A stretch of 64,000 nt of DNA from Vitrella brassicaformis CCMP3155 (GCA_001179505.1 CDMY01000204.1:103761-167760), one strand, 5' to 3'. Positions 10,830 to 56,458 are shown, counted from the first letter of the stretch. A program made the numbers and translations. The notes: a model not told the origin generated them from the letters alone.

Positions 10830-11804
10830 GGACTGGCCTTGCTGACTTGGCTGGCTCATACATATGAAAGGTGTGCATCGTGCTCTACGCTGTTTGTTGT
10901 TGGAGTGTGTGTGTGCGTGACTCTTTTTCGTCTGCTTCCGTCCTATTCGTTTTTGCAAATGCAACGGAAGGCGACCGCCCTGCTCCCGTGTGCAGAGCGG
11001 GCGTGCATTACACGCAAAACACCCTTGTGTGAACGTGTGTATGCGCGTCCCATCTGCACTGTCTATCGGTGTTTATGTGTTGCACTTGCTCTCTGGTTGT
11101 GTATCTGCATGTGTGTCCGCATGGATGTGATCGTTCATCTCGCTCGGTAGCCAGTGGTGCTTGCAGGCAATGACCTTGCGAGCTGCACATCTGGAATTGC
11201 TTGCACACACACATCTCCCTCAAGAGAGTTCATGTGGTGGCTGAGTACATGTGCATGTTTCTGTCTGCACAAAGGTCATTTGCCCTTTTACGTCTCACCC
11301 CATCTGTCCTCTTGTCACTCGCAGGTAAGTGGCTGTCACGTGATGCGTGCTCGCGTGTGCATGTCGATAGATGAGCATACAGGTGATTTGTCCTTCTGAA
11401 CTTGGCGCCTGGTGTGTATGGGTGTCTGTGTGACCTGCCGTCTCGGGCGGGTACACAAGAGCGGGCACATCACGTGCGCAGACACCACCCCCAAGTCATT
11501 TTCACTCCCACACGCCCTTTTGTAATTCGGTGTAATTCTTTGGACAACAAATGTGGACGAATTTTCATTTTGATTTAGACATTGATTCTGTCGGTGCCTC
11601 TCCTGACGGGCCAGCTAAATCCTTCCCAGAACTTTTCTGTCGCCGCGCAGCCTAAACCATCACCGCCTGGCAAACGCTTCTCAACACATGTGCAGTCCGG
11701 CTGGACCAGGGGCACATCGAGCGTGGCCGTGGGTTGGCTGAACATTGTTGCTGCTTCGATACTGTAATGACGGACGTCCTCTGACCGGTAGTGAGCATAC
11801 GTAT
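10740..11804 (+). repeat. Near-identical duplicated segment A (last codons of S74 gene 1 plus about 1 kb downstream)
   Basis: From CAGCTGGCCGACATCC to GTGAGCATACGTAT it aligns by eye with 12920-13973, with only scattered SNPs and small indels. Confidence 0.95.
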
Positions 11805-11957
11805 GTCTCGGCAATTTACCACAACGGTCGTCGAGAAATCTCACACAGCGTGCACTTCCGTTGTGGCACGTACAGTACGGCTCACTGTACCTTTGCAACA
11901 GCATTCCTCGTTCACCCGTCCGTCCTTCCCGCCCTTTTCTCTGCAGCTGCCGTCACG

Positions 11958-13009
11958 ATGCGTGCCCTCATTGTGCTCGTCGCCCTTGCCATCGTGTGCG
12001 TCACGCGTGCGGGCGCGGCTGAACTCAGCAGCTTCACCTTGTTCGACCGAGAGTGGTCTGAGCAGAGTTGCTCTACCTTGCCCCTCGAATCACCCTATCT
12101 CGCGGTTGCCGACGTCAACACTGGAGAAGTTCAACCGGATGAGGGTGGGCGAGCTCAGAAGGATAGGCAGGCTATCCCTGGGCACGTGAGTCTCATCTTG
12201 TGTGTGCGCGTCAGGCTCCATCGGATGTGGCTTTGAGTTCCGCATTGGCAGCGTGTACGCGACCAACATCTTCAGGACAAACGAGCAGAGCATCTCTGAC
12301 GAGCAATTCAAGACTGACCTGCAGGTGAGGGGTCGGTCATGTCTCATGACGTCCACAAGAAAACACGACACTTCCTGTCTGTCTGGCTGCCTACCTGCTT
12401 GCCTGCAGGATATGAGCCCTGAGTTCAGTGAAGAAGTATACGACAAGGTGAGTTACTGCACATGAAGGCGTGTTCGACGACACACATTTGGTGTCCGACG
12501 TGTCCAGTTCGCCGATCTGCATCTCAAGTTTTTCCCCTGGGACTCAGAGAAGATCAAGATGCGCTCCGGGGCCGAGGAGGACCACTGGGAGATAGGTGAG
12601 TCGGAAAGGAAGGAATGCTCGGCACGTATGTCAAGCAGAGACTAAGACGCACTCCCTCTGCCCGTTTGTCTCCAGGAGTAGTAGCCCAAGAGGTTCAGAA
12701 GGTGTTTCCAGGTACTCTTGCACACTCTTGCCGACGTGTGATGGTCTTCTGTCTCTAATTCTTCCTGTCCTAGATGCCGTGCGCACATACGAGGAGGCCA
12801 TTAGGGATGGCGCAAACTCCACCACGACCGAGGTCCATTACGTCAACATGGACTACATGAGCTACCTGCAGATGACCGTAGTCCAGCAGCTGCAGAAGCG
12901 AGTCGAGTCGTTGGAGAAACAGCTGGCCGACATCCAGGCGGAACAGGAGAACGGCTTCATGACCGTGCTCGAGCAGGCCCTCAAGGACTTTAGAGGCGGC
13001 CGCGACTGA
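11958..13009 (+). CDS. Small secreted protein with peptidase S74 / ICA domain and coiled coil, copy 2
   Basis: Signal peptide MRALIVLVALAIVCVTRAGA, passenger, SDEQFKTDLQ (Ser at 12295), LHLKFFPW, EIG|VVAQEVQKVFP|DAV, YVNMDYMSYLQMTVVQQLQKRVESLEKQL. Intron positions largely match copy 1, with one extra intron in the passenger. Confidence 0.82.
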
Positions 13010-37799: not shown

Positions 37800-38274
37800 G
37801 TGATGCGTTATTGTCTTTTTTCCTACGATGGTGGCCATGAACGAGAACTTGTGGCGTCTTCATGGATATGCGTGACTCTTCTTTTCCCGTACTCATGGTC
37901 GCTCATGGTTTTCGAAAAGGATTCCACATCACGGACTGTGAATCCGTTTTGAACAAGAAAATGAGCAAAGATGGTGTGCCGGGCTGCGGGAGCCAATCGT
38001 GTCGTAATGACATACGACAAGAAATCAAAGGACAGTGATCTTAGGTGTGTCCCGCACACCATGACATTGCTTGACGAGACACGAGACAGCATCACTGCTT
38101 CTACATAGGCGCGTGACGTTGTTGTGAAACAGAGGGTAATGGTCACTACATAGCGCGATGACGGGAGTGTCCACCACTCCCTCATGAATGTGTGCCGAGA
38201 CAAATCAGCAACTTACGATTCCAGTGACACAACAGCAATGACTGAAAGACAATTGAATAGACATAACTATGACA

Positions 38275-41200
38275 TCATCTCGGCCACTCGTTTTCGTGCG
38301 AGAGCCTGGGCTCCGGCGGTCTTCTCGAACGTTCGAGCGCCTGCTCGCATGAACAGGAAAGCACAAGCAAGCATCTCATGAATGGAGCCTGCCATCGCCG
38401 CCTGACCTTGAGTCTCTGGTCGAGACTGTCCATCCTCGTCAGCAGCTCCGTACACGCTTCCCTTTCTCGCAGCCTCCTGCTGAGTGTGGCAACGTCGCTC
38501 CTCAAGCGGTCGATCTCACCTTGCTGCTTCTGAATTGTTCGACTGCGATCCTGGAGTGGACATGGGATACGAAGGGGTACTGGTATCAGGCTACTGACAC
38601 ACCGTACCTGATAGGCTTGAGTCAACAAGGCGATCAGATCCTGTTTGATGCAAATAGCAACACACAACAGGAAACGAGTACAAATGTCTGAGTCAATCGC
38701 GGCGTGCGTACTGTAAGGCGCAAAAAATGGGCTTGGGTCCCTTCGCTGAGAGCGTGGACCGATACGATCTCCGACAAGACAGGCTTCACATCCTGTGGAC
38801 GCCAGGACACGGCGAAACCGCGGGAAGAGGTCTCTAGCCACCTCTGCAGGATTTCCAGCGTACCTGCGCAACGAATCCGAAGTTCTTGCCCCCTCCGTGC
38901 TTCGCCTGCAGCACGACCAAGGAAGTTTGGTTCAACACAGAAGCACATGTGCGTTACCTGATCCTTAAATTCAAACTTCACGGGCTTCAAAGCGCTTAAA
39001 ACCCCGTGAGCGTTAGCAAATAACAGGTCAGTAGCATTCGCCCCTCGCGGCTGGTGGGAAGCCCTCATCTGCAGATATCGTGACAGGGGCTGGATATTCG
39101 TCTTCAACCTTGCATCGGAAAGCAAGCTACACCCTCGAAGCACGCAATTCGGGGAGTTGCCAAAGTCGACGGAACCAAAGGCATTTAAGGCCGCACCAGC
39201 GTCTATCAACAGCTGCGAACCAAGGGTCATTGACAGCGTGCCAGCAACAACGACGTTATTGAAAGTCGCCACATCTTGCACAGTGAGTGACGACCCGAGA
39301 CAAGCAAATGACCTCACGGAGAGGGAGCTGCCGATGGTGGCCATGTCTCGAAGTGACAGGGAGCTGCCGAGGATGACGTGGTCGAAGACGGACAGAGAGG
39401 CCCCCAAACGCGCCACGTTGTGAACCGAAAGCGACGAACCGAGGCGAGCGAAGGATCGGACCGACAAGGACGACCGCAAGTCGGCAAAGCTGCTCACTGA
39501 CAAGCTGCTGCCCAGCTCAGTCGGACCGCTCACAAAGAGGGAAGACGCCAAAGCAGATTGGCCGTCGACCGAAAGAGAGGAGCCGAGCTGAAGCGGGCCG
39601 TCAACAGCCAATCCGCCGCTAATGACGCCGTCTTTGTGGACGGACAGCCGATCGCCCACATACGTGAATGATCTCACGGAGAGAGAGCTGCCGATGGTGG
39701 CCATGTCTCTCACTAACAAGCTGCTGCCCAGTTCACTCGGACCGCCCACAGAGAGGGAAGACGCTAGCTCAGATGGACCGTCGACTGACAGCCTTTCCCC
39801 GACCTGCACACATTGCAGTTAACAGACCAATGTGTTAACAGACCATACAGCCCAGAGCATGTCTGAGATCTGCTGGTCGTCGCCGCCTTACTCTGAGCCA
39901 CTGATCAAGGGACAATGAGTAGTATTTGGGAAGGTCCCAGTACTCGAGGAACGCACCACCATATGGTGTCAGTTTGAAGACATCTTTCATCTCCGCAAAC
40001 GTCGAGTTGTACACTTTGATGGTGAGTTGGGGAGTGTTATCATACTCAAAAGACGATTCGAGCGTCGGTTGCGTTCGATGGGTCCCACAGAAGCGAGACA
40101 GACTTGTCTAGATACACAGCCGAGCTGAGACTGAGACTCCCAAGGATCGACGCATTGTGGTGGACCGTCAGCTGACTTTCGAGCTCGGTCGGCCCGCCAA
40201 CAGACAGGGAAGACGCCAGCTCAGATGGACCGTCGACTGACAGCCTTTCCCCGACCTGCACACATTGCAGTTAACAGACCATACAGCCCAGAGCATGTCT
40301 GAGATCTGCTGGTCGTCGCCGCCTTACTCTGAGCCACTGATCAANNNNNNNNNNNNNNNNNNNNNNNNNNNNNNNNNNNNNNNNNNNNNNNNNNNNNNNN
40401 NNNNNNNNNNNNNNNNNNNNNNNNNNNNNNNNNNNNNNNNNNNNNNNNNNNNNNNNNNNNNNNNNNNNNNNNNNNNNNNNNNNNNNNNNNNNNNNNNNNN
40501 NNNNNNNNNNNNNNNNNNNNNNNNNNNNNNNNNNNNNNNNNNNNNNNNNNNNNNNNNNNNNNNNNNNNNNNNNNNNNNNNNNNNNNNNNNNNNNNNNNNN
40601 NNNNNNNNNNNNNNNNNNNNNNNNNNNNNNNNNNNNNNNNNNNNATGACGCCGTCTTTGTGGACGGACAGCCGATCGCCCACATACGTGAATGATCTCAC
40701 GGAGAGAGAGCTGCCGATGGTGGCCATGTCTCTCACTGACAAGCTGCTGCCCAGCTCAGTCGGACCGCTCACAAAAAGGGAAGACGCCAAAGCAGATTGG
40801 CCGTCGACCGAAAGAGAGGAGCCGAGCTGAAGCGGGCCGTCAACAGCCAATCCGCCGCTGATGACGCCGTCTTTGTGGACGGACAGCCGATCGCCCACAT
40901 ACGTGAATGACCTCACGGAGAGGGAGCTGCCGATGGTGGCCATGTCTCTCACTGACAAGCTGCTGCCCAGCTCAGTCGGACCGCTCACAAACAGGGAAGA
41001 CGCCAAAGCAGATTGGCCGTCAACCGAAAGAGAGGAGCCGAGCTGAAGCGGGCCGTCAACAGCCAATCCGCCGCTAATGACGCCGTCTTTGTGGACGGAC
41101 AGCCGATCGCCCACATACGTGAATGATCTCACGGAGAGAGAGCTACCGATGGTGGCCATGTCTCTCACTAACAAGCTGCTGCCCAGCTCACTCGGACCGC

Positions 41201-44200
41201 CCACAGAGAGGGAAGACGCTAGCTCAGATGGACCGTCGACTGACAGCCTTTCCCCGACCTGCACACATTGCAGTTAACAGACCATACAGCCCAGAGCATG
41301 TCTGAAATCTGCTGGTCGTCGCCGCCTTACTCTGAGCCACTGATCAACGGACAAGGTGTAGTATCGCGGGAGGTCCCAGTACTCGAGGAACGCACCACCA
41401 TATGGTGTCAGTTTGAAGACATCTTTCATCTCCGCAAACGTCGAGTTGTACACTTTGATGGTGAGTTGGGGAGTGTTATTATACTCAAAGACGATTCGAG
41501 CGTCGGTTGCGTTCGATGGGTCCCACAGAAGCGGGACAGATTTGTCTAGATACACAGCCGAGCTGAGACTGAGACTCCCAAGGATCGACGCATTGTGGTG
41601 GACCGTCAGCTGGCTTTCGAGCTCGGTCGGCCCGCCAACAGACAGGGAAGACGCCAGAGACGATCTGTCGCTAACCGAGAGTAGGCCCGAAAGCACAGCG
41701 TCGCCGGAGACGCTAAGGGTGGAGCCGAGATGAGCAAATGACATAACGGAGAGAGAGCTGCCGATGGTGGCCATGTCTCTCACTGACAAGCTGCTGCCCA
41801 GCTCAGTCGGACCGCTCATAAACAGGGAAGACGCCAAAGCAGATTGGCCGTCAACCGAAAGAGAGGAGCCGAGCTAAAGCGGGCCGTCTACAGCCAATCC
41901 GCCGCTAATGACGTCGTCTTTGTGGACGGACAGCCGATCGCCCACATACGTGAATGATCTCACGGAGAGAGGGCTGCCGATGGTGGCCATGTCTCTCACT
42001 AACAAGCTGCTGCCCAGCTCACTCGGACCGCCCACAGAGAGGGAAGACGCTAGCTCAGATGGACCGTCGACTGACAGCCTTTCCCCGACCTGCACACATT
42101 GCAGTTAACAGACCATACAGCCCAAAGCATGTCTGAGATCTGCTAATCGTCGCCGCCTTACTCTGAGCCACTGATCAACGGACAAGGTGTAGTATCGCGG
42201 GAGGTCCCAGTACTCGAGGAACGCACCACTATATGGTGTCAGTTTGAAGACATCTTTCATCTCCGCAAACGTCGAGTTGTACACTTTGATGGTCAGTTGG
42301 GGAGTGTTATCATACTCAAAGACGATTCGAGCGTCGGTTGCGTTCGATGGGTCCCACAGAAGCGAGACAGACTTGTCTAGATACACAGCCGAGCTGAGAC
42401 TGAGACTCCCAAGGATCGACGCATTGTGGTGGACCGTTAGCTGACTTTCGAGCTCGGTCGGCCCGCCAACAGACAGGGAAGACGCCAGCTCAGATTGGCC
42501 GTCGACCGAAGGAGAGGAGCCGAGCTGAAGCGGGCCGTCAACAGCCAATCCGCCGCTGATGACGCCGTCTTTGTGGCCACGTTGTGAACCGAAAGCGACG
42601 AACCGAGGCGAGCATAGGATCGGACCGACAAGGACGACCGCAAGTCGGCAAAGCTGTTCACTAATAAACTGCTGCCCAGGTCGAGTGTTTCGAGTATGTC
42701 AAGGGTCGCTCCTGTCTCCACAGTGAGCGTTGCACCCGCGAGGACGTCCAGATTGGTGCCCATTGTCACAGTGAAACTGGCATTCGTCGACACCCCATCA
42801 CCCAGCAGCCAATCGCCCGCCAGAAGGCCCCCCGCCTTGTTGGCCGACGTGATGTCTGCGGAGCTGTAGTCTTTGATGCTCAGGGCCGGCTGCGTGCCGC
42901 AGAGGGCTGTGTAGCCCTTGACAGACAGCGAGCTCTCCATCACCGCCTCACTCTGACCCCGCAACTCTCCAACGTAAGTCAGCCGAGACGCATCAACAGA
43001 AAGCGTGCCCAAGAAGACAGATGGACCGTCGATTGAAAGAGAGGAGCCGAGCTGAAGCGGGCCGTCAACAGCCAATCCGCCGCTGATGACGCCGTCTTTG
43101 TGGACGGACAGCCGATCGCCCACATACGTGAATGATCTCACGGAGAGAGAGCTGCCGATGGTGCCCATGTCTCGCAGCGACAGGGAGCTGCCGAGGATGA
43201 CGTGGTCGAAGACGGACAGGGAGGCCCCCAAACGCGCCACGTTGTGAACCGAAAGCGACGAACCGAGGCGAGCATAGGATCGGACCGACAAGGACGACCG
43301 CAAGTCGGCAAAGCTGCTCACTAACAAACTGGTGCCCAGGTCGAGTGTCTCGAGTATCTCAAGGGTCGCTCCTGTCTCCACAGTGAGCGTTCCGCCCGCG
43401 AGGACGTCCAGATCGGTGCCCATTGTCACAGTGAAACTGGCATTCGTCGACACCCCATCACCCAGCAGCCAATCGCCCGCCAGAAGGCCCCCCGCCTTGT
43501 TTGCCGACGTAATGTCTGCGAAGCTGTAGTCTTTGATGCTCAGGGCCGGCTGCGTGCCGCCGAGGGCTGTGTAGCCCTTGACAGACAGCGAGCTCTCCAT
43601 CACCGCCTCACTCTGACCCCGCAACCTCCCGACATGGCTCAGCTTTGATGGCTGGACCGATATGGGTCCAAGGAAAACCGATGAGCCGTCGACAGACAGA
43701 GTGCTGCCCATCTGATGAAAACGAAATTCAATGAGATACACACAGCCGTCGATGATGCAATGACATGACTCATGGAAGGAACGGCGGTTTTGAGTATGTG
43801 CGGAGCAGAATAGAATATTCATGTCGCTTACACGTAGCCACTGATTTATGGATAGCGTGTAGTATACAGGAAGATCCCAGTACCCGAGAAATGCACCACC
43901 ATACGCCGTTATCTGTAATACATCTTCTAACCTCGCATTTGATGCATTGAAGACTCTGAAGGTTAGCTGAGGTGGGTCATCATATGCGAAGAGAACTTCA
44001 GGATCCGTTGCAGTCGACGAGTCCCACAGAAGCGAGGCAGACTTGTCTAGATATACAGCCGAGCTGAGACTGAGACTCCCAAGGATCGACGCATTGTGGT
44101 GGACCGTTAGCTGGCTTTCGAGCTCGGTCGGGCCGCCAACAGACAGAGAAGACGCCAGAGACGATCTGTCGCTAACCGAGAGTAGGCCCGAAAGCACAGC

Positions 44201-47200
44201 GTCGCCGGAGACGCTAAGGGTGGAGCCGAGATGAGCAAATGACATGACGGAGAGAGAGCTGCCGATGGTGGCCATGTCTTGCAGCGACAGGGAGCTGCCG
44301 AGGATGACGTGGTCGAAGACGGACAGGGAGGCCCCCAAACGCGCCACGTTGTGAACCGAAAGCGACGAACCGAGGCGAGCGAAGGATCGGACCGACAAGG
44401 ACGACCGCAAGTCGGCAAAGCTGCTCACTGACAAGCTGCTGCCCAGCTCAGTCGGACCGCTCACAAAGAGGGAAGACGCCAAAGCAGATGGACCGTCGAT
44501 TGAAAGAGAGGAGCCGAGCTGAAGCGGGCCGTCAACACCCAATCCGCCGCTGATGACGCCGTCTTTGTGGACGGACAGCCGATCGCCCACATACGTGAGT
44601 GATCTCACGGAGAGAGAGCTGCCGATGGTGGCCATGTCTCGCAGCGACAGGGAGCTGCCGAGGATGACGTGGTCGAAGACGGACAGGGAGGCCCCCAAAC
44701 GCGCCACGTTGTGAACCGAAAGCGACGAACCGAGGCGAGCGAAGGATCGTACCGACAAGGACGACCGCAAGTCGGCAAAGCTGCTCACTGACAAGCTGCT
44801 GCCCAGCTCAGTCGGACCGCTCACAAAGAGGGAAGACGCCAAAGCAGATGGACCGTCGATTGAAAGAGAGGAGCCGAGCTGAAGCGGGCCGTCAACAGCC
44901 AATCCGCCGCTGATGACGCCGTCTTTGTGGACAGACAGCCGATCGCCCACATACGTGAGTGATCTCACGGAGAGAGAGCTGCCGATGGTGGCCATGTCTC
45001 GCAGCGACAGGGAGCTGCCGAGGATGACGTGGTCGAAGACGGACAGGGAGGCCCCCAGACGCGCCACGTTGTGAACCGAAAGCGACGAACCGAGGCGAGC
45101 GAAGGATCGGACCGACAAGGACGACCGCAAGTCGGCAAAGCTGCTCACTGACAAGCTGCTGCCCAGCTCAGTCGGACCGCTCACAAANNNNNNNNNNNNN
45201 NNNNNNNNNNNNNNNNNNNNNNNNNNNNNNNNNNNNNNNNNNNNNNNNNNNNNNNNNNNNNNNNNNNNNNNNNNNNNNNNNNNNNNNNNNNNNNNNNNNN
45301 NNNNNNNNNNNNNNNNNNNNNNNNNNNNNNNNNNNNNNNNNNNNNNNNNNNNNNNNNNNNNNNNNNNNNNNNNNNNNNNNNNNNNNNNNNNNNNNNNNNN
45401 NNNNNNNNNNNNNNNNNNNNNNNNNNNNNNNNNNNNNNNNNNNNNNNNNNNNNNNNNNNNNNNNNNNNNNNNNNNNNNNNNNNNNNNGGCAAAGCTGCTC
45501 ACTGACAAGCTGCTGCCCAGCTCAGTCGGACCGCTCACAAACAGGGAAGACGCCAAAGCAGATGGACCGTCAACCGAAAGAGAGGAGCCGAGCTGAAGCG
45601 GGCCGTCAACAGCCAATCCGCCGCTAATGACGCCGTCTTTGTGGACGGACAGCCGATCGCCCACATACGTGAATGATCTCACGGAGAGAGAGCTGCGATG
45701 GAAGCCACTCCAATAACGTTAATCGTGTCGACGTCGCCTGCTTGAATCGTGCGGCCTGTGATATTCCATGTGCCTCCGGTGTGGACATTGAGCGTTGCAC
45801 CCGCGAGGACGTCCAGATTGGTGCCCATTGTCACAGTGAAACTGCCATTCGTCGACACCCCATCACCCAGCAGCCAATCGCCCGCCAGAAGGCCCCCCGC
45901 CTTGTTGGCCGACGTAATGTCTGCGGAGCTGTAGTCTTTGATGCTCAGGGCCGGCTGCGTGCCGCCGAGGGCTGTGTAGCCCTTGACAGACAGCGAGCTC
46001 TCCATCACCGCCTCACTCTGACCCCGCAACCTCCCGACATGGCTCAGCTTTGATGGCTGGACCGATATGGGTCCAAGGAAAACCGATGAGCCGTCGACAG
46101 ACAGAGTGCTGCCCACCTGATGAAAACGAAATTCAATGAGATACACACAGCCGTCGATGATGCAACGACATGACATGGAAGGAACGGCGGTTTTGAGTAT
46201 GTGCGGAGCAGAATAGAATATTCATGTCGCTTACACGTAGCCACTGATTTATGGATAGCGTGTAGAGAACAGGAAGGTCCCAGGAGCCGAGAAATGCACC
46301 ACCGTACGGTGTCACTTGGAGCACATCCACAAGAGCTGTGGCCGTCGAGTTGTACACCCTGAATGTTATTCGAAGTGTGTTGTCGTACACAAGCGCTACT
46401 TGAGGATCCGTTGCAGTCGATGAGTCCCACAGAAGCGAGACAGACTTGTCTAGATACACAGCCGAGCTGAGACTGAGACTCCCAAGGATCGACGCATTGT
46501 GGTGGACCGTTAGCTGGCTCCTGAGCTCGGTCGGCCCGCCAACAGACAGAGAAGACGCCAGAGACGATCTGTCGCTAACCGAGAGTAGGCCCGAAAGCAC
46601 AGCGTCGCCGGAGACGCTAAGGGTGGAGCCGAGATGAGCAAATGACATAACGGAGAGAGAGCTGCCGATGGTGGCCATGTCTCGCAGCGACAGGGAGCTG
46701 CCGAGGATGACGTGGTCGAAGACGGACAGGGAGGCCCCCAAACGCGCCACGTTGTGAAGTGAAAGCGACGAACCAAGGCGAGCAACTGACGCCAGCGAAA
46801 AACTGCTACCAAGCTCCACAAATCCACCCACGGAAAGAGAGCTTCCCAGTAATGTGGCGTCGAAGATAGTGACTTGTGAGCCCAGAGATGTCAGCCCACC
46901 CACAGAGAGGGAAGATGCTAAGTCAAATCGGCTTTCGATTGAAAGAGAGGAGCCGAGCTGAAGCGGGCCGTCAACAGCCAATCCGCCGCTGATGACGCCG
47001 TTTTTGTGGACGGACAGCCGATCGCCCACATACGTGAGTGATCTCACGGAGGGAGAGCTGCCGATGGTGGCCATGTCTCGCAGCGACAGGGAGCTGCCGA
47101 GCATGACGTGGTCGAAGGCGGACAGGGAGGCCCCCAAACGCGCCACGTTGTGAACCGAAAGCGACGAACCAAGACGAACAAATGAGCGGACGGATAGAGT

Positions 47201-48543
47201 GCTTCCAATGGCCAGGAGGCCTCCGAGTGCCGTTTGGTCGAAGACTGACATGGAACTGAATGTGACGTCTCCCTGGACAGAGAGGTCCGAGCCCAGCGAC
47301 ACGAAATCCCTCACCTACAGCAACAGCCAAAGACATTTGTCGGTCTTCTGCGGTCACAAACATGGCAGATCGCTCTGCTTACCGAAAGGGACGATCCGAA
47401 CGAAACGAAGTCGAAAGCGGACAGGCTCCCTCCGAAACGGCTAGTTCCCGAAAGAGACATCGAGAAGCCCAGGCGTGTGAAAGACCTCACCGATAAGGAC
47501 GAGCCGAAATCCACACGATCAATTGCAGAAAGAGCACCATTTGCGACCGACCCGCCAAAGACACTCAGGCCGGAACCGATACTTGTACTCGTGCTCACCG
47601 AGAGGGCGTTGCCCTGTCACAGCAGAGACGGAAGGTGACTTTAATCAATTGGGAGCTTGTGGGTCGACTTGGACCTCCTCCGGTCACCTGACCAAGAATG
47701 TAGTGGACGCGACACTAAGGCTGCCTCTGACATTGACGTCATTCCCAAACAGGGCCTCGTTTCCCACCTGAGGCGGCCAAACCCCATGATATATAACACA
47801 TTTCTTCCATTGCTCACCGAAAAGTCGCCGAAGAATCTTGTTCGTGCGGCCACATCAACAGTACCTAAGACGAGCGCACAGGATGAGTAAGCGCATCAAC
47901 CACACTCAGCCTCACGGTCGAGCACAACACATCCATCCTCAATCCTTTCTGATCTTCTCCCTTCGAAAGAAACCCACCAGCAACAGAGATCGAGGCGCCG
48001 TAGCGCGTGAGACCCTTCACGCTCAGGTGCTGCGAGAAATAGGTCGGCTGCAGGATCGTCAAGTAATTCGGTCCAGCGGATATCTGCGATACAGGAGATA
48101 TCACCAACACACGACGAACAAGACGTTCGCGCCAAATAAAGGAAAGGATGCAGGCGAAACGTGTGATGCTCCTTGCCTGGTCAAGATTGAGAGGTACATA
48201 TCGGAGAACCAGGGGGGCTGGACCAACAGTGCGGTCCAGGAGCATCTCCCATCTGCGATCCCCCTGTACTCCACATGGAAAACAGGAAGGCAATGATCTG
48301 GGTTCTATTCGCCAAGATGCATCCACCTGCAACGTGAATGACAGTTTCGGATCCCCTCGCACAGGGTGCACGTCGAGAGGTCCCGTAACGCTGATGGTGC
48401 CTGAATGAATGGCCAATGAGTACCCAAAGGGCTCATGCATCGTGGCCTCTCACCGTCCTCCCGACGAGCAGCCAGCAGAACACATGCTGGAAGAACCCAG
48501 CGAGTACAAACAGCAGGAACGGGAGGCCAAGCCGCCTTCTCAT
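38275..48543 (-). CDS. Giant secreted 12-residue-repeat (LGSSLSVxxxxx) protein with C-terminal peptidase S74/ICA domain and coiled coil; several frame lesions and two gaps
   Basis: Signal peptide MRRRLGLPFLLFVLAGFFQHVFC (ATG 48543). Long arrays of GSSLSVRSF-type 12-mers with exact 360-nt and 216-nt periods. Then SDARLKTNIQPL (Ser at 39117-39119), LSALKPVKFEFK, NFGFVAQ|DVKPVLSEIV, QDLIALLTQAYQ and coiled coil IQKQQGEIDRLRSDVATLSRRL. Confidence 0.8.
40345..40644. other. Assembly gap (300 N)
   Basis: Run of N. Confidence 1.
45188..45487. other. Assembly gap (300 N)
   Basis: Run of N. Confidence 1.
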
Positions 48544-48768: not shown

Positions 48769-51700
48769 TCACAGCCGCGAGAGAGTTCCTTCTGGCTGCT
48801 CTTCTGCTCCCGTGTCTGACTCACCGATGTCCTCTCCGCTGTCTGCAGTTTCGGTTGTGATAGGGCCATCACTGCTGACGTCATCTGTCTGCTGGAACGA
48901 TGTATGTGGATGGGAAGCAAGGGGAATGGGCGGGCACACATCGTGACAAGACACTGTGCGGTACTCCGTCAATCTGCCGTAATCCTCGATTTCTTGGGCC
49001 GTCAATGTGCAGTAATCGTTCTCCTTGAAGACGTGCTGCACTCGCACCTTAAGGTCGACCTCCTCGTCACACCTGCTGCACTCCTCTGGCTCGACCAAGA
49101 CGTTGACCCAGGAACACTCCATTGCTGATCGAGAACCCACGACATGGATGTGTGAGGGGATTGACATTGTGAACGACACATGTACCAGTGTCTCACGTGT
49201 TTTGATCTCCTGTGGAGCTTCGCAAATGAACGTTTCCTGCTTACGATCCAGGCTGTACGTTGTCACGCGCCAGCTGAAAGCAGACAGGATGGAATGAGAG
49301 ACGGGTTGTCTTCGACAATGGTGCTCACTCTCCGTGCTCGGGGGGAATCGGTGGCGTGAGGAATCTGAACTTGATCCACTCGGGCACGACCGTCTCGCTG
49401 TTGTTGTGTGGCCGGATGTAGTCGTACAGGGATATATGCACCGAGTTGGCGGGGCCCTCCTGGTTACCTCTCTCGCCGAGCACCTCACACTTGCTTATCT
49501 TACCGAAAGACTTGCCTCTGCAAAGAAAGCACCGTAGGTGGAAGACCAGGCTTATTGGCTCACAGTCTTACGTCCATGAGCACGTTCTGTTTCCGAGGCC
49601 GAAATCGAAACCAGGAGGGGCATAGATCTCCAGCTGAGAGCGAGAGAGGCAATCTATGCTATGGCTGGTTCCGCCGTTCTGTGGTCACGAGGAATGATTA
49701 ATACCTTATGCGCCTGTTGCACGAGCGTCACCCATACCCAGACACTTGTGGTTTTACCGGTTTGGGCTTCTCCCTCCAAGTATATCGCACAGTCAGCTAC
49801 GAAACACAGTGTGGGCATTCACTCGTTTGCACCATTGATGGCTGTCTGTCTCCGTTAGCTTACGGCACGTATCGACACCGCAAGGCTCCTCGTGAAGTAT
49901 CTCCTTGGCCGGGGGACACTGCTCGCCCAGTTGGGAGTCAGACTGGCGGGGCCACACTGGAATCACCTGACTGAACATCGATGGTCATGCGTGACAAGTC
50001 GCTTGGCCCGCACCTGTCCTGTTTCCACACCGTATTCTGGTGATTCGGCCGATTCCTCCACAGGGGTACGGGCACATGCCGTCGCCCCACGGATAGTAGC
50101 GAGCGTCGTAGCGCTGCCAGTCGGTGTATCGGCACTGATACTCTGACACATCCGATCATCACAAGCGGGGATGCGTGTCATTGGCCCGTCGGTCTTCTGC
50201 TCTGACCGCATGGCTTGATGTGCTCAGGGTCACAAGGCAGCCGTCTTTTGGCAACGTTGTCTTCTTCGTCCCAGTACGCGTTGCCTGTCCCCTTTTGCAG
50301 GTCAGGATGCTCTTCACAGGACAAACCATCACCCTAGACGAAGGACAAGCACAATTGAACACCCCAGACTCACATTCTCTTTCAATCTGTCTTTACCATT
50401 GGCGGCACTTCGATGGTTCGAATGTCGATGCGAAAAGCTTTGATCCCATGTTTCGCCTCTCTCCCTTCTGCTGTCAGGCACGCTGCAGTGCAGCTGCGAA
50501 AAAACACCGACCGTAAGCGTTTATCGAGTGCATTTCACTGACGCTCACGGCACGATGTTGGTCCATTCGCTCAGCTGACAGTCAACAGCTGCAGCCATAC
50601 ATACACGGTAGAGACACAGGCAATTTGGCTGATCACCACGCTCTTATTTTTACCGCATTCTTTGCTGTTTGCGCAAGGCACCTCTCGCACTGGGCTGCCG
50701 CAACTCTCAGGATTGTGAGTGGGAGCAGACCAAAGAGTTCTCTTCTGGAGAAAGTAACCTCCAGCTGAAAAGGTGCAAGTGGATGTCCCCACCAGCCGGT
50801 GTCAACGGATGCTGATGGAGACTTACGGCCACAAGTGACGGAGCACTTCGTCACGGTCTGCCATTCGCTCCATTGACAGCGATCCTCTGGAGACAGAGAC
50901 AGGGACACAAATGCACTTGTTGTGACGGGCGCGTATACCCCTGCCGACCTTCGTGCAGGTTGGTGTTTGGGGCCCTTTCAAACAGGCGATGGTGGCTATG
51001 GAACTCAAAGAACGCGATCCTGGGAAGGGATGAGTGAGCCGCGAAAGCGATAGGAAAAAGGTCAAAAGCCATGAGACCCGTACCAGTGATTTACCAGTGA
51101 TTCCTCTCATTGGAAGAGTCCAGCGGCATCTCAGCCGTCCGCACTTGGATAGTGAGGTTGTGAGCGCCGAAGGGAGACCGCCCGTCCCTTTCGCCACGTT
51201 GATCTCAACACCCTGTCCACTCTGCGCCAGGAGACTTCTCAGCGCGTTTTTGTCGCGTGGATTGATGTCTTCCTTCCGCTTGTAGATGCATTGGATCTCC
51301 GGAAGGCCTTTCTCATCCTCTGGGACGCTGCAGTCGACCAAATTGCCGAAGCGGCGAATCAGAGTGTAGCCAGGGGGAGTCACGAGAAGCAACTGCGATG
51401 ATATCAAGAAAATGGCAACTATTGCAATGTTTCTCGCCCGCTTCCTACGTGTTTGATTCGATTCGTCTCCCTTATTTTGGCATCTTCCTTTGCATCGTAG
51501 TGGACGATGACCGTCTCCTCCGTGTCAGTCGTCTGCGTCCGGGGCTCAATTATGTCAAAGGAGAAAGGATGCGGGTTGCCCTTGTTGATACTGTCGAGCT
51601 TCAGGGTGATCGGCCATGCACTGGTGAGACGGTCCTCCTCGCCGGTGGCCGCAATCTGGGTCTGAGTTGCAGACACTGCTTCAACCAAGTGGCTCTGTGA

Positions 51701-54733: not shown

Positions 54734-55222
54734 TATCCACGTGCAGGATCTGTGATGTCGGGGTGTGGACAGACTCTACACACACGATTTATCACATCTC
54801 ATGCAGTATGAACAGAGGAAGTGCATGCATGGAAAGCGCCATACACAATCTGCAGACACGAAACGATATTGATGAAGGCCTACCATCAGAAGGCTTCTTG
54901 AATTCTCACGTATATCACCAGCGGCGTGTCTGACACTGGGGCAGCCACGCCGCTGGTGGGTTTTATAAGGTAAGTAGTGAGAGATACAGGGCGAGCGGGC
55001 AGAGGCGTCTCCTGGGTGACCCTCGTCCTCAAAGTCGCCTGTCACGTCGATGTGAGCAGGAAGGGCAGACATCGGACGGGAAAAAAGGGCGGCCTTTCCC
55101 CTATGCAGCCCGCACTGAGAGTTTTTCGGACTCGCAACGAACGAGGGTTTCTTTGGGTCCCCGTGGGGACAAGGCCGCTTTGTAAGCCGAGACCTCCCTT
55201 TGAAAGTTACCCCGTAACGATC

Positions 55223-56458
55223 ATGGAGAACCTATACGACCGCCTTGGCGTCTCGCGGGACGCCACTGCTACTGAGATCAAGAAGTCTTTCCGACAGCTG
55301 GCGCTGCGGCACCACCCAGACAAGGGTGGTGATGTGGAGCTATTCAAGAACATCAACATTGCATGGGAGGTGCTGGGAGACGATGACAAGCGCAGCGACT
55401 ACGACAAGAAGCTCATACGTCTGCGGTCCATGGACGGGCTGAGGAGCGGCAGACGCGATTACAATGGTGGTGACTCGCAAACCGGCGTGCGGCTTGTGCG
55501 ACGGGCAACGACCTTCGAACATGGAAAGGAAGCGCCTCAGCGGACCGATGCGGGTGCCGCAAAAGACGCCCAGGAACCGAAGCAAGGAGCGAATCTCTTC
55601 ACTCGCCGGGCTTCTGATGCAAACGCCAAGACAGCGTCCACAAACGGAGACGGCACGTCACAGAAGAAGGCCCCGGGCGCTTTCGAGATTCCTTCTGACC
55701 CAAGCAGCCTCACCGTGAAGGAACTGAAAGACCTGCTTTCGCACCTGGGCATCATTCACGATGACTGCATTGAGAGAGGGGATTTGCTGGAGAGGCTGCG
55801 GAGCAGGAGGGATTTCGCCGCATCGAAGCGTCCTGCTGCACCAAAAATGCCGGAGACATCTCCTCAATCCTATTCCTCCAAAGCCGGGCGGCCGCTACGC
55901 ATAAAGGTGATATCATTGGGAGCAGAGGAGACGGGGAAGAGCTGTCTTATCAAGCGCTTCTGCGAGGGACGCTTTGTCAATCGGTACATCTCAACATACG
56001 GCATCGATTACGGCGTCAAAGAGGTGCAGATCGGGTCGCACAACATCAAGATCAACTTTTGGGACCTGTCGGGCCACGACGATTTCTACGACATCCGGAA
56101 CGAGTTCTTCGATCACGTGCAGGGGGTCCTGTTGGTGTTTGATGTGACGAATCGGCAGTCTTTCGAGCGGCTCAACGGATGGCTGCAGGAGGCCAAGAGA
56201 CACAGCCTGCAGCTGTCCAGAGCATCTTCCTCCCGCGGGCCCCCCTTTGTGGTGCTGATCGGCAACAAAGTGGACAGGGGTGGGAGGGTGGTGGCGCAGA
56301 GCGAGGGGGCGGGATTCGCGGCTTCTCATGGGATGGATTACTACGAGACATCGGCCAACACGGGCTACAACGTGCAGGAGGCCCTGATGGCGCTGTTCAA
56401 GAAGGCGGTTGACCAGCTGCTCTCCCAAAGACACAGGTTCGGCATTGCCAATGTGTGA
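55223..56458 (+). CDS. RJL: DnaJ-domain + RJL-family Rab-like GTPase, intronless
   Basis: N-terminal J domain (LYDRLGV...HHPDKGG...AWEVLGD). GTPase IKVISLGAEETGKSCLIKRFCEGRFV...YGIDYGVK, WDLSGHDDFYDIRNEFF, IGNKVD, ETSA. KVIS.G, IDYGV and RNEF are RJL signatures. Confidence 0.92.
   Translation: MENLYDRLGVSRDATATEIKKSFRQLALRHHPDKGGDVELFKNINIAWEVLGDDDKRSDYDKKLIRLRSMDGLRSGRRDYNGGDSQTGVRLVRRATTFEHGKEAPQRTDAGAAKDAQEPKQGANLFTRRASDANAKTASTNGDGTSQKKAPGAFEIPSDPSSLTVKELKDLLSHLGIIHDDCIERGDLLERLRSRRDFAASKRPAAPKMPETSPQSYSSKAGRPLRIKVISLGAEETGKSCLIKRFCEGRFVNRYISTYGIDYGVKEVQIGSHNIKINFWDLSGHDDFYDIRNEFFDHVQGVLLVFDVTNRQSFERLNGWLQEAKRHSLQLSRASSSRGPPFVVLIGNKVDRGGRVVAQSEGAGFAASHGMDYYETSANTGYNVQEALMALFKKAVDQLLSQRHRFGIANV

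What the first reader, a model, noticed from the sequence alone, without database searches (positions are those of the whole stretch)
38275..48543. Giant secreted tailspike-like fibre: 12-residue beta repeats capped by a self-cleaving S74 chaperone
Seen: signal peptide; well over 100 LGSSLSVxxxxx-type 12-mers in exact 6x and 10x super-repeats, interrupted by recurring non-repeat modules (DKSVSLLWD...YGGAFL.YWDLP.YYTLS; AGGLLAGDWLLG); then SDARLK, KPVKFEFK, GFVAQ and a coiled coil. Established: this order (beta-repeat shaft, then S74 ICA with Ser-Lys dyad, then coiled coil) is the architecture of phage tailspikes and fibres whose trimeric beta-helix needs the chaperone to fold. Inference: an intron-containing eukaryotic extracellular triple-beta-helix fibre (adhesin, wall filament or extrusome part), a poorly described use of ICA beyond MYRF-type transcription factors.
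Basis: partly seen in the sequence, partly recalled or inferred. Interest (0 to 1): 0.85.

Follow-up and report, generated by a model that had tools for sequence, protein, structure and literature searches.

The report
Algal repeat fibre gene with self-cleaving cap
The alga Vitrella brassicaformis carries an expressed, intron-containing gene locus for a long beta-repeat fibre that ends in the self-cleaving "chaperone" cap of phage tail fibres. It belongs to an unstudied gene family shared with dinoflagellates and Perkinsus, but the assembly does not show that the whole 10 kb is one giant secreted protein.

Summary
The sequence features are real. On the minus strand there are about 130 twelve-residue LGSSLSV-type units, exact 216-bp (6-unit) and 360-bp (10-unit) tandem super-repeats, two recurring non-repeat modules, and a C-terminal Peptidase_S74/ICA domain (SDARLK Ser-Lys dyad, KPVKFEFK, GFVAQ) followed by a helical tail.

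RNA contigs confirm five GT-AG introns that assemble a complete S74 domain. SDARLK lies in the same exon as the last repeats.

The window is Vitrella brassicaformis CCMP3155 (CDMY01000204.1). The gene belongs to a large, undescribed family of repeat + S74 proteins in dinoflagellates, Perkinsus and chromerids. Its closest large relatives are giant-virus fibres. Intron positions are shared with a 39%-identical Vitrella paralogue and the neighbours are cellular genes, so this is a resident nuclear gene.

One giant protein is not established. The assembly (Illumina, velvet) breaks the frame at three sites, has one in-frame TAG, and has two N gaps that abut the arrays. The official annotation splits the locus into four genes, and only the last (436 aa) carries S74.

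The proposed signal peptide is unverified. Trimer formation and secretion are inferred. A monomer model gives a beta-solenoid at moderate confidence. This scan had already noted S74 genes elsewhere in this genome.

The parts
38275..38340 (-). Last coding exon (C-terminal tail) with stop codon at 38277-38275
   Evidence: Spliced RNA contigs X1 and X7. The in-frame translation ends ...NEWPR*. The annotated 436-aa model has the same end.
38407..38550 (-). Exon encoding the helical, coiled-coil-like segment (48 aa)
   Evidence: Flanked by GT-AG introns 38341-38406 and 38551-38607, both seen as joints in RNA contigs. Heptad check. The homologous part is a long helix in the model of P0002.
38608..38640 (-). 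S74 exon (DLIALLTQAYQ)
   Evidence: RNA joints. Aligns to the family motif YQDLIAxLT.
38712..38792 (-). S74 exon (DVKPVLSEIV...FLRLT)
   Evidence: RNA joints. The alternative open reading 'EVARDLFP' upstream of it is intronic. The intron position is shared with paralogue P0079.
38864..38905 (-). S74 exon (AKHGGGKNFGFVAQ)
   Evidence: RNA joints in X1. Intron 38906-38957 is retained in the X7 contig. The intron position is shared with P0079.
38958..39803 (-). Last repeat exon: about 16 twelve-residue units, a non-repeat neck, the predicted cleavage site ...GCSLL|SDARLK (Ser 39119-39117, Lys 39104-39102), a linker and KPVKFEFKDQ
   Evidence: Continuous ORF. RNA contig X7 record 21 covers 39032-39305 unbroken. 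PF13884 positions 1-15 match at 18.2 bits. AF2 beta-solenoid model.
39804..39891 (-). Predicted GT-AG intron after DQWLR. Sister introns lie at 40256-40327, 41259-41330 and 42090-42161.
   Evidence: GTAAGG...TGCAG in four near-identical copies. Used in the annotated 436-aa model. The only RNA contig across it (X7 record 24) is unspliced.
39892..40344 (-). Module A copy with preceding repeats. The frame is broken by an extra T at 40048.
   Evidence: TTTT where the two sister copies have TTT.
40345..40644 (.). Assembly gap 2 (300 N)
   Evidence: The flanks show that the end of a repeat block and a whole module A are missing.
40645..41258 (-). 216-bp tandem array (6-unit super-repeat) running into gap 2
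   Evidence: TRF: period 216, 2.8 copies, 94% matches.
41331..42089 (-). Repeats plus module A. An in-frame TAG lies at 41876-41874. The annotated 143-aa protein CEL94085.1 maps to 41744-41349.
42162..42583 (-). Repeats plus module A, entered through an out-of-frame junction (...SVHNVA | HKDGV...) at 42584/42575
42584..43711 (-). Exon with two module B copies separated by repeats
   Evidence: Open frame of 376 codons. Part of the annotated 424-aa model. No homologues were found for module B.
43712..43831 (-). Predicted intron (120 nt, happens to be in frame). Its sister intron 46117-46234 is 118 nt.
   Evidence: GTAAGC...ATCAG in both copies. The 118 versus 120 nt lengths show that the piece is not held to a reading frame. 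The copy at 46117-46234 is used in the annotated model P0249.
43832..45187 (-). 360-bp tandem array (10-unit super-repeat), then repeats and module A
   Evidence: TRF: period 360, 2.6 copies, 98% matches. Translation.
45188..45487 (.). Assembly gap 1 (300 N) inside the 360-bp array
   Evidence: the implied missing length is 306 + 360n bases.
45488..46116 (-). Module B copy and repeats. A 1-nt deletion near 45696 breaks the frame, and the annotated 1205-aa model stops at 45679.
46235..47314 (-). Exon with 21 to 25 repeat units and module A
   Evidence: 360 open codons. It is an exon of P0249.
47383..47613 (-). First regular repeat exon
47693..48400 (-). Five short annotated exons (beta-rich, degenerate repeats) upstream of the array
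   Evidence: Mapping of P0249 onto the window.
48454..48543 (-).
   Evidence: Maximum 10-residue Kyte-Doolittle mean 2.82. It lies inside the 424-nt annotated intron. All in-frame donors are phase 0, so it can join exon 16 (48263) but not exon 15 (and reading of the sequence).
48823..51129 (-). Fourteen annotated exons of a cysteine-rich TSP1-domain region, fused to the fibre in the official model
   Evidence: P0249 residues 1-494. TSP1_spondin scores 42.3 bits (cut-off 41) and TSP_1 scores 22 bits (cut-off 21.6).

Best explanation
This is a resident nuclear locus of Vitrella brassicaformis. It belongs to a family found across Myzozoa: a 12-residue LGSSLSV repeat shaft, a neck, a Peptidase_S74 intramolecular chaperone, and a C-terminal helix.

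The 3'-most unit (at least the annotated 436 codons, 39990 to 38275) is intact, transcribed and correctly spliced. The roughly 7.5 kb upstream on the same strand is coding sequence of the same kind: about 115 more repeat units, module A six times, module B three times. It has evolved under purifying selection. It is most likely part of the same long gene (about 2,600 assembled codons, more inside the gaps), and its frame breaks are most likely faults of a short-read assembly of near-identical tandem arrays.

Inferred mechanism, from phage endosialidase and tail-fibre ICA domains and from MYRF:
1. Three chains meet through the C-terminal ICA domain and helix.
2. This nucleates folding and trimer formation of the beta-solenoid shaft.
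3. The Ser-Lys dyad of SDARLK then cuts the chain before the Ser. This leaves a mature fibre ending ...GCSLL and releases a 175-residue cap.

Shown here: the sequence features, splicing of the S74 part, family membership, and intron conservation. Inferred: trimerisation, cleavage, the single long chain, and where the fibre sits in the cell.
For: - Repeats, arrays and modules.
- Five introns are confirmed by spliced contigs of runs X1 and X7, and an RNA contig spans SDARLK and the last repeats.
- The spliced product is open to a stop at 38275. It scores 92 bits over the whole C-terminal profile built from 91 family members, against 34 bits unspliced.
- Family members pass PF13884 at 37-47 bits against a cut-off of 22.
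- The family profile hits solved tail-fibre ICA domains and MYRF: 6f45 at 1e-10, plus 8jov, 7dc3 and 8hqz.
- The model of homologue P0002 matches the MyRF ICA best: Z 7.2, 113 residues.
- PHROG tail-fibre families match the homologue's C-terminus, at 1e-17.
- Ser and Lys are invariant in the alignments.
- The window is identical to CDMY01000204.1, and the annotated 436-aa model equals my spliced model in length and ends.
- Three S74 introns sit at the same positions in the 39%-identical paralogue P0079.
- The neighbours are cellular genes: an RBM22-like gene, a DnaJ-Ras gene and a proteasome subunit gene.
- dN/dS between module A copies is 0.22-0.28 at dS 0.56-0.84.
- Long uninterrupted relatives exist: 1612 aa on an RNA contig, and many of 2000-7000 aa.
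- The last exon models as a beta-solenoid.
- Both gaps abut the tandem arrays (one lies inside the 360-bp array), and the assembly was velvet k75 on Illumina reads.
Against: - As assembled the frame is broken four times. One break is a TAG that no sister copy could have supplied by mis-mapping.
- The official RNA-guided annotation makes four genes.
- No RNA contig bridges 38981-39031.
- The only contig across the DQWLR intron is unspliced.
- DNA-like contigs of X3 and X4 leave the window sequence at 39109, inside SDARLK.
- The repeats of homologue P0002 did not fold in AF2, with pLDDT 32-43.
- Pfam itself gives only 18.2 bits on the window's unspliced ORF.
- Cleavage and trimerisation are untested.
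Confidence: 0.6

Rival explanations
1. Only the last unit is a working gene: a few hundred residues of repeats plus S74, like the 330-670 aa family members. The upstream 7 kb would be a decaying tandem array of former units or separate defective genes. The 'giant fibre' would then come from reading through pseudogene pieces.
For: - There are three frameshifts and one TAG.
- The annotation splits the locus into models of 1205, 424, 143 and 436 aa.
- Most family members are small.
- Module A ends in [DN]QWLR where the terminal unit has SDARLK, and it carries a GGxLxGxW-like motif as in homologues' necks. That would fit fused, degenerate former gene ends.
Against: - dN/dS of 0.22-0.28 between old module copies shows long-term translation.
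- The internal units have no S74 remnants, no start codons with their own upstream regions, and they keep clean GT-AG introns.
- The likeness between module A and the neck is not significant: hmmsearch E 0.2 and hhalign probability 5.5%.
- Two of the lesions are single-base length changes in homopolymer runs. One is a repeat-to-repeat junction typical of collapse in a short-read assembly.
Confidence: 0.3
2. The gene is an endogenised viral fibre gene from a giant virus or a polinton-like virus, sitting in the algal genome, rather than a gene with a cellular role.
For: - The strongest long matches include P0122 (2783 aa; repeats plus terminal S74). It lies on contigs with giant-virus markers DUF5767, DUF5759 and Pox_A22.
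- Polinton-like viruses of protists carry modular fibres of up to 3.9k aa with a terminal S74 (PMC12220804).
- Heterosigma virus S74 genes vary from 444 to 1529 aa (PMC13659346).
Against: - At least 11 spliceosomal introns lie between 47382 and 38341. Five are confirmed by RNA, and three are shared in position with a 39%-identical paralogue on another scaffold.
- No viral hallmark genes lie nearby, and the neighbours are cellular genes.
- G+C is about 0.48-0.57, like the rest of the window.
- The family is expressed in transcriptomes of Oxyrrhis, Pfiesteria, Biecheleria, Alexandrium, Chromera and Perkinsus.
- An ancient viral origin of the family remains possible.
Confidence: 0.08
3. The fibre is real but not secreted. 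It would be a cytoplasmic or cortical (pellicle-associated) filament, and the first reader's signal peptide would be a chance ORF in an intron or intergenic spacer.
For: - Of 70 Met-initiated family members with the S..RLK motif, only one has a hydrophobic N-terminal window. Repeats begin at a median of 9 residues from the Met, and 28 of 92 start with Met-Gly.
- Phage ICA domains fold in the bacterial cytoplasm and the ICA of MYRF faces the cytosol, so S74 does not need the secretory pathway (established knowledge).
- The ORF at 48543 cannot join the next annotated exon in frame.
Against: - Many transcriptome ORFs may be 5'-truncated. Met occupies repeat position 1 in 5% of internal units, so Met-Gly starts can be artefacts.
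- The official model fuses the fibre to a TSP1-domain region, which is an extracellular domain type.
- The ORF at 48543 can join exon 16 in frame, and it sits in a 424-nt 'intron' that looks like a gene boundary.
Confidence: 0.35

Closest known systems
C-terminal intramolecular chaperone (Peptidase_S74, PF13884) of phage endosialidases, tail spikes and tail fibres (solved examples matched here: 6f45, 8jov, 8hqz)
   Same: - The domain sits at the C-terminus behind a beta-repeat shaft.
- It carries the S-D-x-R-L-K motif with Ser and Lys five residues apart.
- The core is conserved (LRPVxF, GFIAQ, DLIAxL), followed by a helix.
   Different: - It is encoded by a eukaryotic nuclear gene split by five introns.
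- A variable linker of 25-60 residues separates the Ser-Lys motif from the core.
- The shaft is a 12-residue repeat with no solved counterpart.
- No virion context is present.
MYRF / MrfA membrane-bound transcription factors (ICA domain, 7dc3)
   Same: This is a eukaryotic use of the ICA. The best structural match of the homologue's model is the MyRF ICA (Z 7.2), and the family profile hits it.
   Different: - No NDT80-type DNA-binding domain was found by Pfam.
- I saw no hydrophobic segment after the ICA when reading the spliced tail.
- The N-terminal part is a long repeat shaft, not a transcription factor.
Modular fibre proteins of giant viruses and polinton-like viruses of protists with a terminal S74
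   Same: - They are very long (2000-4000 aa and more).
- They have LSV-type 12-residue repeats scoring as bactofilin-like or hexapeptide-like.
- They have a terminal S74.
- Their length varies (PMC12220804; PMC13659346).
   Different: - The viral genes lie uninterrupted on gene-dense contigs among viral genes.
- This gene has introns, cellular neighbours and orthologue-like relatives across Myzozoa.
- Identity to the viral proteins is only about 30%, and repeats drive most of the score.
Database-labelled but unstudied 'Peptidase S74 domain-containing proteins' of alveolates (for example Alexandrium monilatum P0041 and Vitrella P0079)
   Same: Same family and same order of parts. P0079 shares the Vitrella-type neck (FNNV..GTL...) and three intron positions.
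   Different: - Those proteins are 330-670 aa with 5-30 repeat units.
- This locus has about 130 units, super-repeat arrays and two orphan modules.
- Its terminal neck lacks the GGxLHGxW motif of the dinoflagellate members.

Membership tests
Peptidase_S74 / intramolecular chaperone autocleavage domain (PF13884) | Catalytic Ser and Lys in the S-D-x-R-L-K motif at the start of the domain | tested here: met
   SDARLK lies at 39119-39102. Ser and Lys are invariant in the family alignments.
Peptidase_S74 / intramolecular chaperone autocleavage domain (PF13884) | Score above Pfam's gathering threshold | tested here: inconclusive
   The unspliced window ORF scores 18.2 bits against a cut-off of 22, covering profile positions 1-15 only. 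The spliced product could not be sent to Pfam by reference. It scores 92 bits against a profile of 91 relatives, and the relatives tested pass Pfam at 37-47 bits.
Peptidase_S74 / intramolecular chaperone autocleavage domain (PF13884) | ICA fold, related to solved ICA domains | tested here: met
   The family profile hits 6f45 (1e-10), 8jov, 7dc3 and 8hqz. The model of homologue P0002 hits the MyRF ICA best, Z 7.2 with rmsd 3.0 over 113 residues. This was tested on the family, not on the window's own spliced protein.
Peptidase_S74 / intramolecular chaperone autocleavage domain (PF13884) | Trimerisation-dependent self-cleavage before the Ser | not testable with these tools
   This needs expression, Ser/Lys mutants and mass spectrometry.
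Myzozoan LGSSLSV-repeat + S74 family (unnamed) | N-terminal 12-residue repeats, a neck, S74 with a long linker, and a C-terminal helix | tested here: met
   178 relatives with this order were found from dinoflagellates, Perkinsus and chromerids. The window's last unit aligns from end to end.
Myzozoan LGSSLSV-repeat + S74 family (unnamed) | Neck motif GGxLHGxW shortly before the cleavage site | tested here: not met
   The motif is nearly invariant in dinoflagellate members. It is absent from the window's terminal neck, which resembles that of Vitrella P0079 instead. Similar motifs in modules A and B are not significant.
Phage-type intertwined triple beta-helix shaft | Three chains wound into one helix | not testable with these tools
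   Only monomer prediction was available. The monomer model is a single-chain beta-solenoid at pLDDT 64.5. A homologue's repeats stayed unfolded.
Left-handed beta-helix hexapeptide-repeat proteins (LpxA/LpxD type) | Hexapeptide motif recognised by the Pfam Hexapep models, with 18 residues per turn | tested here: not met
   phmmer finds LpxD at E 1.7e-7, but no Hexapep family appears in Pfam at E up to 0.1. The strand pattern of the model suggests about 24 residues per turn, and its best structural matches are right-handed solenoids.
MYRF-type membrane-bound transcription factor | NDT80 DNA-binding domain before the ICA and a transmembrane helix after it | tested here: not met
   Pfam finds no such domain. 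The tail after the ICA is charged and helical, with no hydrophobic segment.
Viral (giant virus or polinton-like virus) fibre gene | Location in a viral genome or an integrated element with viral hallmark genes | tested here: not met
   The neighbours are cellular genes. The gene has spliceosomal introns shared with a paralogue.

The most novel reading that the evidence does not exclude
Dinoflagellates, perkinsids and chromerids may use phage-type, self-cleaving, chaperone-capped trimeric beta-fibres as ordinary cellular building material, for example a wall or surface filament, a flagellar hair or an extrusome thread. Fibre length would be tuned by expansion of 6- and 10-unit super-repeats. 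This Vitrella locus would be a member of roughly 3000 residues, possibly coupled to a TSP1 adhesive head.
Probability: 0.3. Interest if true: 0.75.

Novelty: new variant of a known kind. Interest (0 to 1): 0.55.

Why it matters
S74 intramolecular chaperones are well studied in phage fibres. In eukaryotic cells the only case studied in detail is the transcription factor MYRF and its orthologue MrfA. Here the domain caps a repeat shaft in an expressed, intron-bearing nuclear gene family shared by dinoflagellates, Perkinsus and chromerids. I found no paper on this family in the library searched.

If these proteins form cellular fibres, they would be an unrecognised structural material of an ecologically and medically relevant group. 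They would also be a clear case of a viral fibre-folding device kept for host use.

For this locus in particular, the practical message is a caution. The short-read assembly of the tandem arrays is unreliable, and the official annotation cuts the locus into four models.

Tried and rejected
- **Pfam on raw ORFs.** It gave only a sub-threshold S74 hit, because the domain is split by introns.
- **My first manual splice guess.** It contained 'EVARDLFP'. RNA joints showed that stretch is intronic.
- **Module A as a degenerate neck plus cleavage site.** hmmsearch E 0.2 and hhalign probability 5.5%, so not supported.
- **Homologues of modules A and B.** None came from the 1.84-billion-protein search, PHROGs or the ESM Atlas.
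- **Foldseek of the last-exon model against PDB.** Nothing below E 0.1. VIA-align was needed to show the solenoid likeness.
- **AF2 of homologue P0002.** The repeats stayed unfolded.
- **N-myristoylation from frequent Met-Gly starts.** This cannot be separated from 5'-truncated ORFs, because Met occupies repeat position 1 in 5% of units.
- **Sushi domain in Chromera P0050** (a name given by UniProt). Pfam did not recover it.
- **The loose end of the X3/X4 contigs.** It is absent from the window and from all fetched loci.
- **Second S74 signal in the window.** Only weak hits at 10482-13006 on the plus strand, which is the other finding's genes.
- **Literature on S74 or endosialidase in dinoflagellates and chromerids.** Only virus papers were found.

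Full report
**What is in the sequence**

The feature lies on the minus strand, and its 3' end is at 38275. Translation of the open pieces shows long runs of a 12-residue unit.
- A motif count gives 132 units with a partner 12 residues away, or 102 by a strict pattern. The consensus is L-G-S-S-L-S-V-x5, with positions 1, 2, 5 and 7 nearly fixed.
- Tandem Repeats Finder reports two higher-order arrays: 216 bp (6 units; 2.8 copies; 94% matches) at 40645-41240, and 360 bp (10 units; 2.6 copies; 98%) at 44247-45187.
- Two non-repeat modules recur. Module A (DKSVSLLWD ... YGGAFL.YWDLP.YYTLS.[DN]QWLR) occurs five times, with a sixth QWLR end at the edge of a gap. Module B (with AGGLLAGDWLLG) occurs three times.
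- SDARLK, KPVKFEFK and GFVAQ are all present near the 3' end.

**Gaps and reading frame**

The scan's program asked for this test first.
- Gap 45188-45487 lies inside the 360-bp array. The last 60 bases before it match the array 54 bases downstream of the phase at which the sequence resumes. The missing length is therefore 306 + 360n bases, always a multiple of three. Continuity in frame is plausible, but copy number is unknown.
- Gap 40345-40644 starts right after the 216-bp array and ends at the last bases of a module A. The rest of a repeat block and a whole module are missing, about 560 bases by analogy with the sister unit. Nothing can be said about its frame.

Apart from the gaps, the frame is broken four times in ways that introns do not explain:
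- One base is missing near 45696, relative to the ATCGGCAGC of sister units.
- A junction of two different repeat units at 42584/42575 is out of frame.
- A TAG at 41876-41874 stands where nine sister copies have CAG.
- An extra T at 40048 gives TTTT where two sister copies have TTT.

The locus as assembled is therefore not one open reading frame.

**Source and official annotation**

A 143-aa protein of Vitrella brassicaformis CCMP3155 (CEL94085.1) maps at 100% identity to 41744-41349. The fetched 20.5 kb of GCA_001179505.1 CDMY01000204.1 is identical to the window, with 0 differences.

The official annotation places four same-strand genes here:
- 1205 aa (51129 to 45679; P0249)
- 424 aa (43711 to 42437)
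- 143 aa (41744 to 41219)
- 436 aa (39990 to 38275; flagged PF13884)

Each model ends or starts at one of the frame breaks.

The assembly was made from Illumina reads with velvet (k = 75), SSPACE, Gapfiller and ICORN (PMC4501334). Such a pipeline cannot resolve 216- and 360-bp arrays at 94-98% identity. Copy numbers and junctions inside this locus are therefore unreliable. That fits two of the lesions, which are single-base length changes in short homopolymer runs. It also fits a third, which is a repeat-to-repeat junction. The TAG is harder to blame on the assembler, because no assembled sister copy carries it.

**Splicing and expression of the S74 end**

Contigs of four public runs were laid on 38150-39990.
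- Runs X1 and X7 carry spliced contigs with five joints whose skipped parts begin GT and end AG on the minus strand. These introns are 38906-38957, 38793-38863, 38641-38711, 38551-38607 and 38341-38406.
- Joining the exons gives an open frame from the last repeat exon to a stop at 38277-38275.
- That frame reads ...KPVKFEFKDQ, then AKHGGGKNFGFVAQ, then DVKPVLSEIV...FLRLT, then DLIALLTQAYQ, then a helical segment and a short tail.
- SDARLK is in the same exon as the last 16 repeats. An RNA contig (X7, 39032-39305) crosses it without a break.

There are caveats:
- No RNA contig covers 38981-39031.
- X7 retains intron 38906-38957.
- The only contig across the predicted intron 39804-39891 is unspliced.
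- Depths are per contig. The 3' contigs run on for 1.5 kb into the convergent RBM22-like gene, so they say nothing about expression level.

**The C-terminal domain is an S74 intramolecular chaperone**

- Pfam on the raw ORF gives only 18.2 bits, against a cut-off of 22, for profile positions 1-15. The domain is split by introns.
- A search with the last ORF found 178 relatives, most with PF13884. Four tested members score 37-47 bits.
- A profile of the C-terminal parts of 91 relatives scores the spliced window product at 92 bits over its full length, against 34 bits for the unspliced ORF.
- Ser and Lys of the S-D-x-R-L-K motif are invariant.
- The family profile hits solved tail-fibre chaperone domains and MYRF: 6f45 at 1.1e-10, plus 8jov, 7dc3 and 8hqz.
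- PHROG tail-fibre families match the C-terminus of homologue P0002, at 1e-17.
- In an AlphaFold2 model of P0002 the neck, the S74 core and a 48-residue terminal helix are confident. The best structural match is the MyRF ICA domain, Z 7.2 with rmsd 3.0 over 113 residues.
- The window's own tail after the S74 core is a proline-free, Leu/Arg-rich stretch of about 60 residues. At best 6 of 8 a/d positions are hydrophobic per 28 residues. It is coiled-coil-like but not proven.

**The family and its relatives**

Named sources of the relatives are:
- dinoflagellates: Alexandrium monilatum, Oxyrrhis marina, Pfiesteria piscicida, Biecheleria cincta and an unnamed dinoflagellate;
- Perkinsus olseni;
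- Chromera velia;
- Vitrella itself.

Many marine metatranscriptome contigs also belong. Typical members are 330-670 aa.

A filter-free search with 868 residues of the internal array found 1410 representatives at E up to 0.001. Many of these are 2000-7000 aa long.
- One of them (P0126, 1612 aa) is of the alveolate type. It sits uninterrupted on a 10.5-kb contig of a Logan run assembly that looks like a transcript, so long members exist.
- Another (P0122, 2783 aa; repeats plus terminal S74) lies among genes with giant-virus markers.

Published work describes terminal S74 on modular fibres of polinton-like viruses of protists, up to 3.9k aa (PMC12220804). It also describes a length-variable S74 gene in Heterosigma akashiwo virus (PMC13659346). 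I found no paper on the alveolate cellular family.

**Cellular gene or viral insert**

The evidence favours a resident nuclear gene:
- The neighbours are ordinary cellular genes: an RBM22/Slt11-like splicing factor, a DnaJ-Ras GTPase, a proteasome subunit and an arylsulfotransferase.
- Composition is like the rest of the window.
- The gene has many short GT-AG introns.
- Three introns of the S74 region lie at exactly the same alignment positions (after KFE[FW]K.Q, after G[FL][VI]AQ, and before D[LF]I) in the 39%-identical paralogue P0079 on another scaffold. Those introns therefore predate an old duplication inside this genome.

A viral origin of the family in deep time is possible but was not tested.

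**Are the internal units coding?**

Nei-Gojobori estimates between module A copies give dN/dS of 0.22-0.28 at dS 0.56-0.84. That indicates sustained selection on the protein.

The piece after [DN]QWLR looks like an intron in every copy (GTAAG...CAG). It differs in length by 2 bases between two copies, 118 versus 120, which a coding segment would not tolerate.

This favours one long gene with assembly faults, or a very recent decay. It cannot decide between the two.

**Fold of the shaft**

- An AlphaFold2 model of the last exon (287 residues, 48-sequence alignment) has mean pLDDT 64.5 and is all-beta with a 12/24-residue rhythm.
- Foldseek found nothing significant.
- An exhaustive structural alignment put only beta-helices and beta-solenoids in the top 50. 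The best were pentapeptide-repeat proteins (Z 11.4, rmsd 3.2, 168 residues). VacA, pectate-lyase-type enzymes and phage tailspike depolymerases were also listed.
- By sequence, the repeats resemble hexapeptide left-handed helices weakly (LpxD, E 1.7e-7). Pfam's Hexapep models do not match.
- The repeats of homologue P0002 stayed unfolded, with pLDDT 32-43.

So a beta-solenoid is supported at moderate confidence. A trimer, intertwined or side by side, is an inference from the S74 cap.

**N-terminus and location**

- It lies inside an annotated intron of 424 nt, while the other 20 introns of that model are 50-118 nt. That outlier suggests Augustus fused an upstream TSP1-domain gene (TSP1_spondin 42.3 bits) to the fibre gene. 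If so, 48543 could be the true start.
- All in-frame donors of that ORF are phase 0. It cannot join the next annotated exon (phase 1), but it could join the following one at 48263.
- Other candidate starts are 51129 (annotated, no signal peptide), 51110 (weakly hydrophobic) and 48440.
- Family members from transcriptomes show almost no hydrophobic N-termini (1 of 70), but many may be truncated.

Secretion is therefore open.

**Unexplained**

DNA-like contigs of runs X3 and X4 (5196 nt) match 38150-39109 exactly. They then continue with letters found nowhere in the window or in the fetched loci, and they leave 39110-39319 uncovered. The RNA contig and the official assembly support the window's junction. 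This could be a second locus or allele sharing the 3' 960 bases, or an artefact of the k = 31 assembly graph.

**Verdict**

It is a new cellular variant of a known kind of protein, the chaperone-capped viral fibre. It belongs to an unstudied family found across Myzozoa.

The claims 'giant', 'secreted' and 'triple beta-helix' remain unproven, and the first is contradicted by the assembly as it stands. Earlier notes of this scan had already flagged several smaller S74 genes in this same genome, so the family is not new to the scan. This locus is its longest and most complex member seen so far.

Noticed in passing
window 48823-51129 (minus strand): Fourteen short exons encode a cysteine-rich region with a TSP1 domain (WSEWQTVTKCSVTCG; TSP1_spondin 42.3 bits). 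The official model fuses them to the fibre through a 424-nt intron, while all its other introns are 50-118 nt. This is probably a separate upstream gene, or else an adhesive head of the fibre.
   Followed up: partly
window 39109 (runs X3 and X4): Unspliced 5196-nt contigs equal the window up to 39109, inside SDARLK. They then diverge into sequence absent from the window. This hints at a second locus or allele sharing the 3' 960 bases, or at a graph artefact.
   Followed up: partly
window 36244 to about 38150 (plus strand): A convergent RBM22/Slt11-like splicing-factor gene (STL11_N, RRM_1; annotated 372 aa) lies here. Its transcript contigs merge with the 3' end of the fibre gene in unstranded RNA assemblies, so the contig depth of the S74 exons cannot be read as expression.
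   Followed up: partly
homologues P0004, P0005, P0018, P0019, P0059, P0079 and others: 28 of 92 Met-initiated family members begin Met-Gly, often MG[SA]SLSV and once MGC. This is an N-myristoylation-like start that would point to a membrane-attached cytosolic fibre. It may also be an artefact of truncated ORFs.
   Followed up: partly
window 38906-38957: This 52-nt intron is spliced in run X1 but retained in the contig of run X7. Retention would put a frame-disrupting insert into the S74 domain.
   Followed up: no
window 10482-13006 (plus strand): Weak matches to the family's S74 profile (E 0.016-0.09) fall in the region another first-stage note (s1-197166) calls secreted mini-proteins with an S74 domain. 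This gene type is clustered on the scaffold.
   Followed up: no
window 54977-56458 (plus strand): A single 493-codon ORF combines a DnaJ domain and a Ras-family GTPase domain (an RJL-type architecture).
   Followed up: no
L002/L003 (GCA_013573075.1, GCA_013572825.1): Giant-virus-like contigs sit inside two very fragmented eukaryotic assemblies. They carry a 2783-aa repeat + S74 fibre gene next to a PA14/GLEYA adhesin-like gene.
   Followed up: no
modules A (e.g. 43832-44116) and B (e.g. 43331-43711): Both modules contain a GGxLxGxW-like motif that recalls the conserved neck of dinoflagellate family members just before their cleavage site. Module A ends in [DN]QWLR where the terminal unit has SDARLK. 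The likeness is at motif level only and is not significant.
   Followed up: yes
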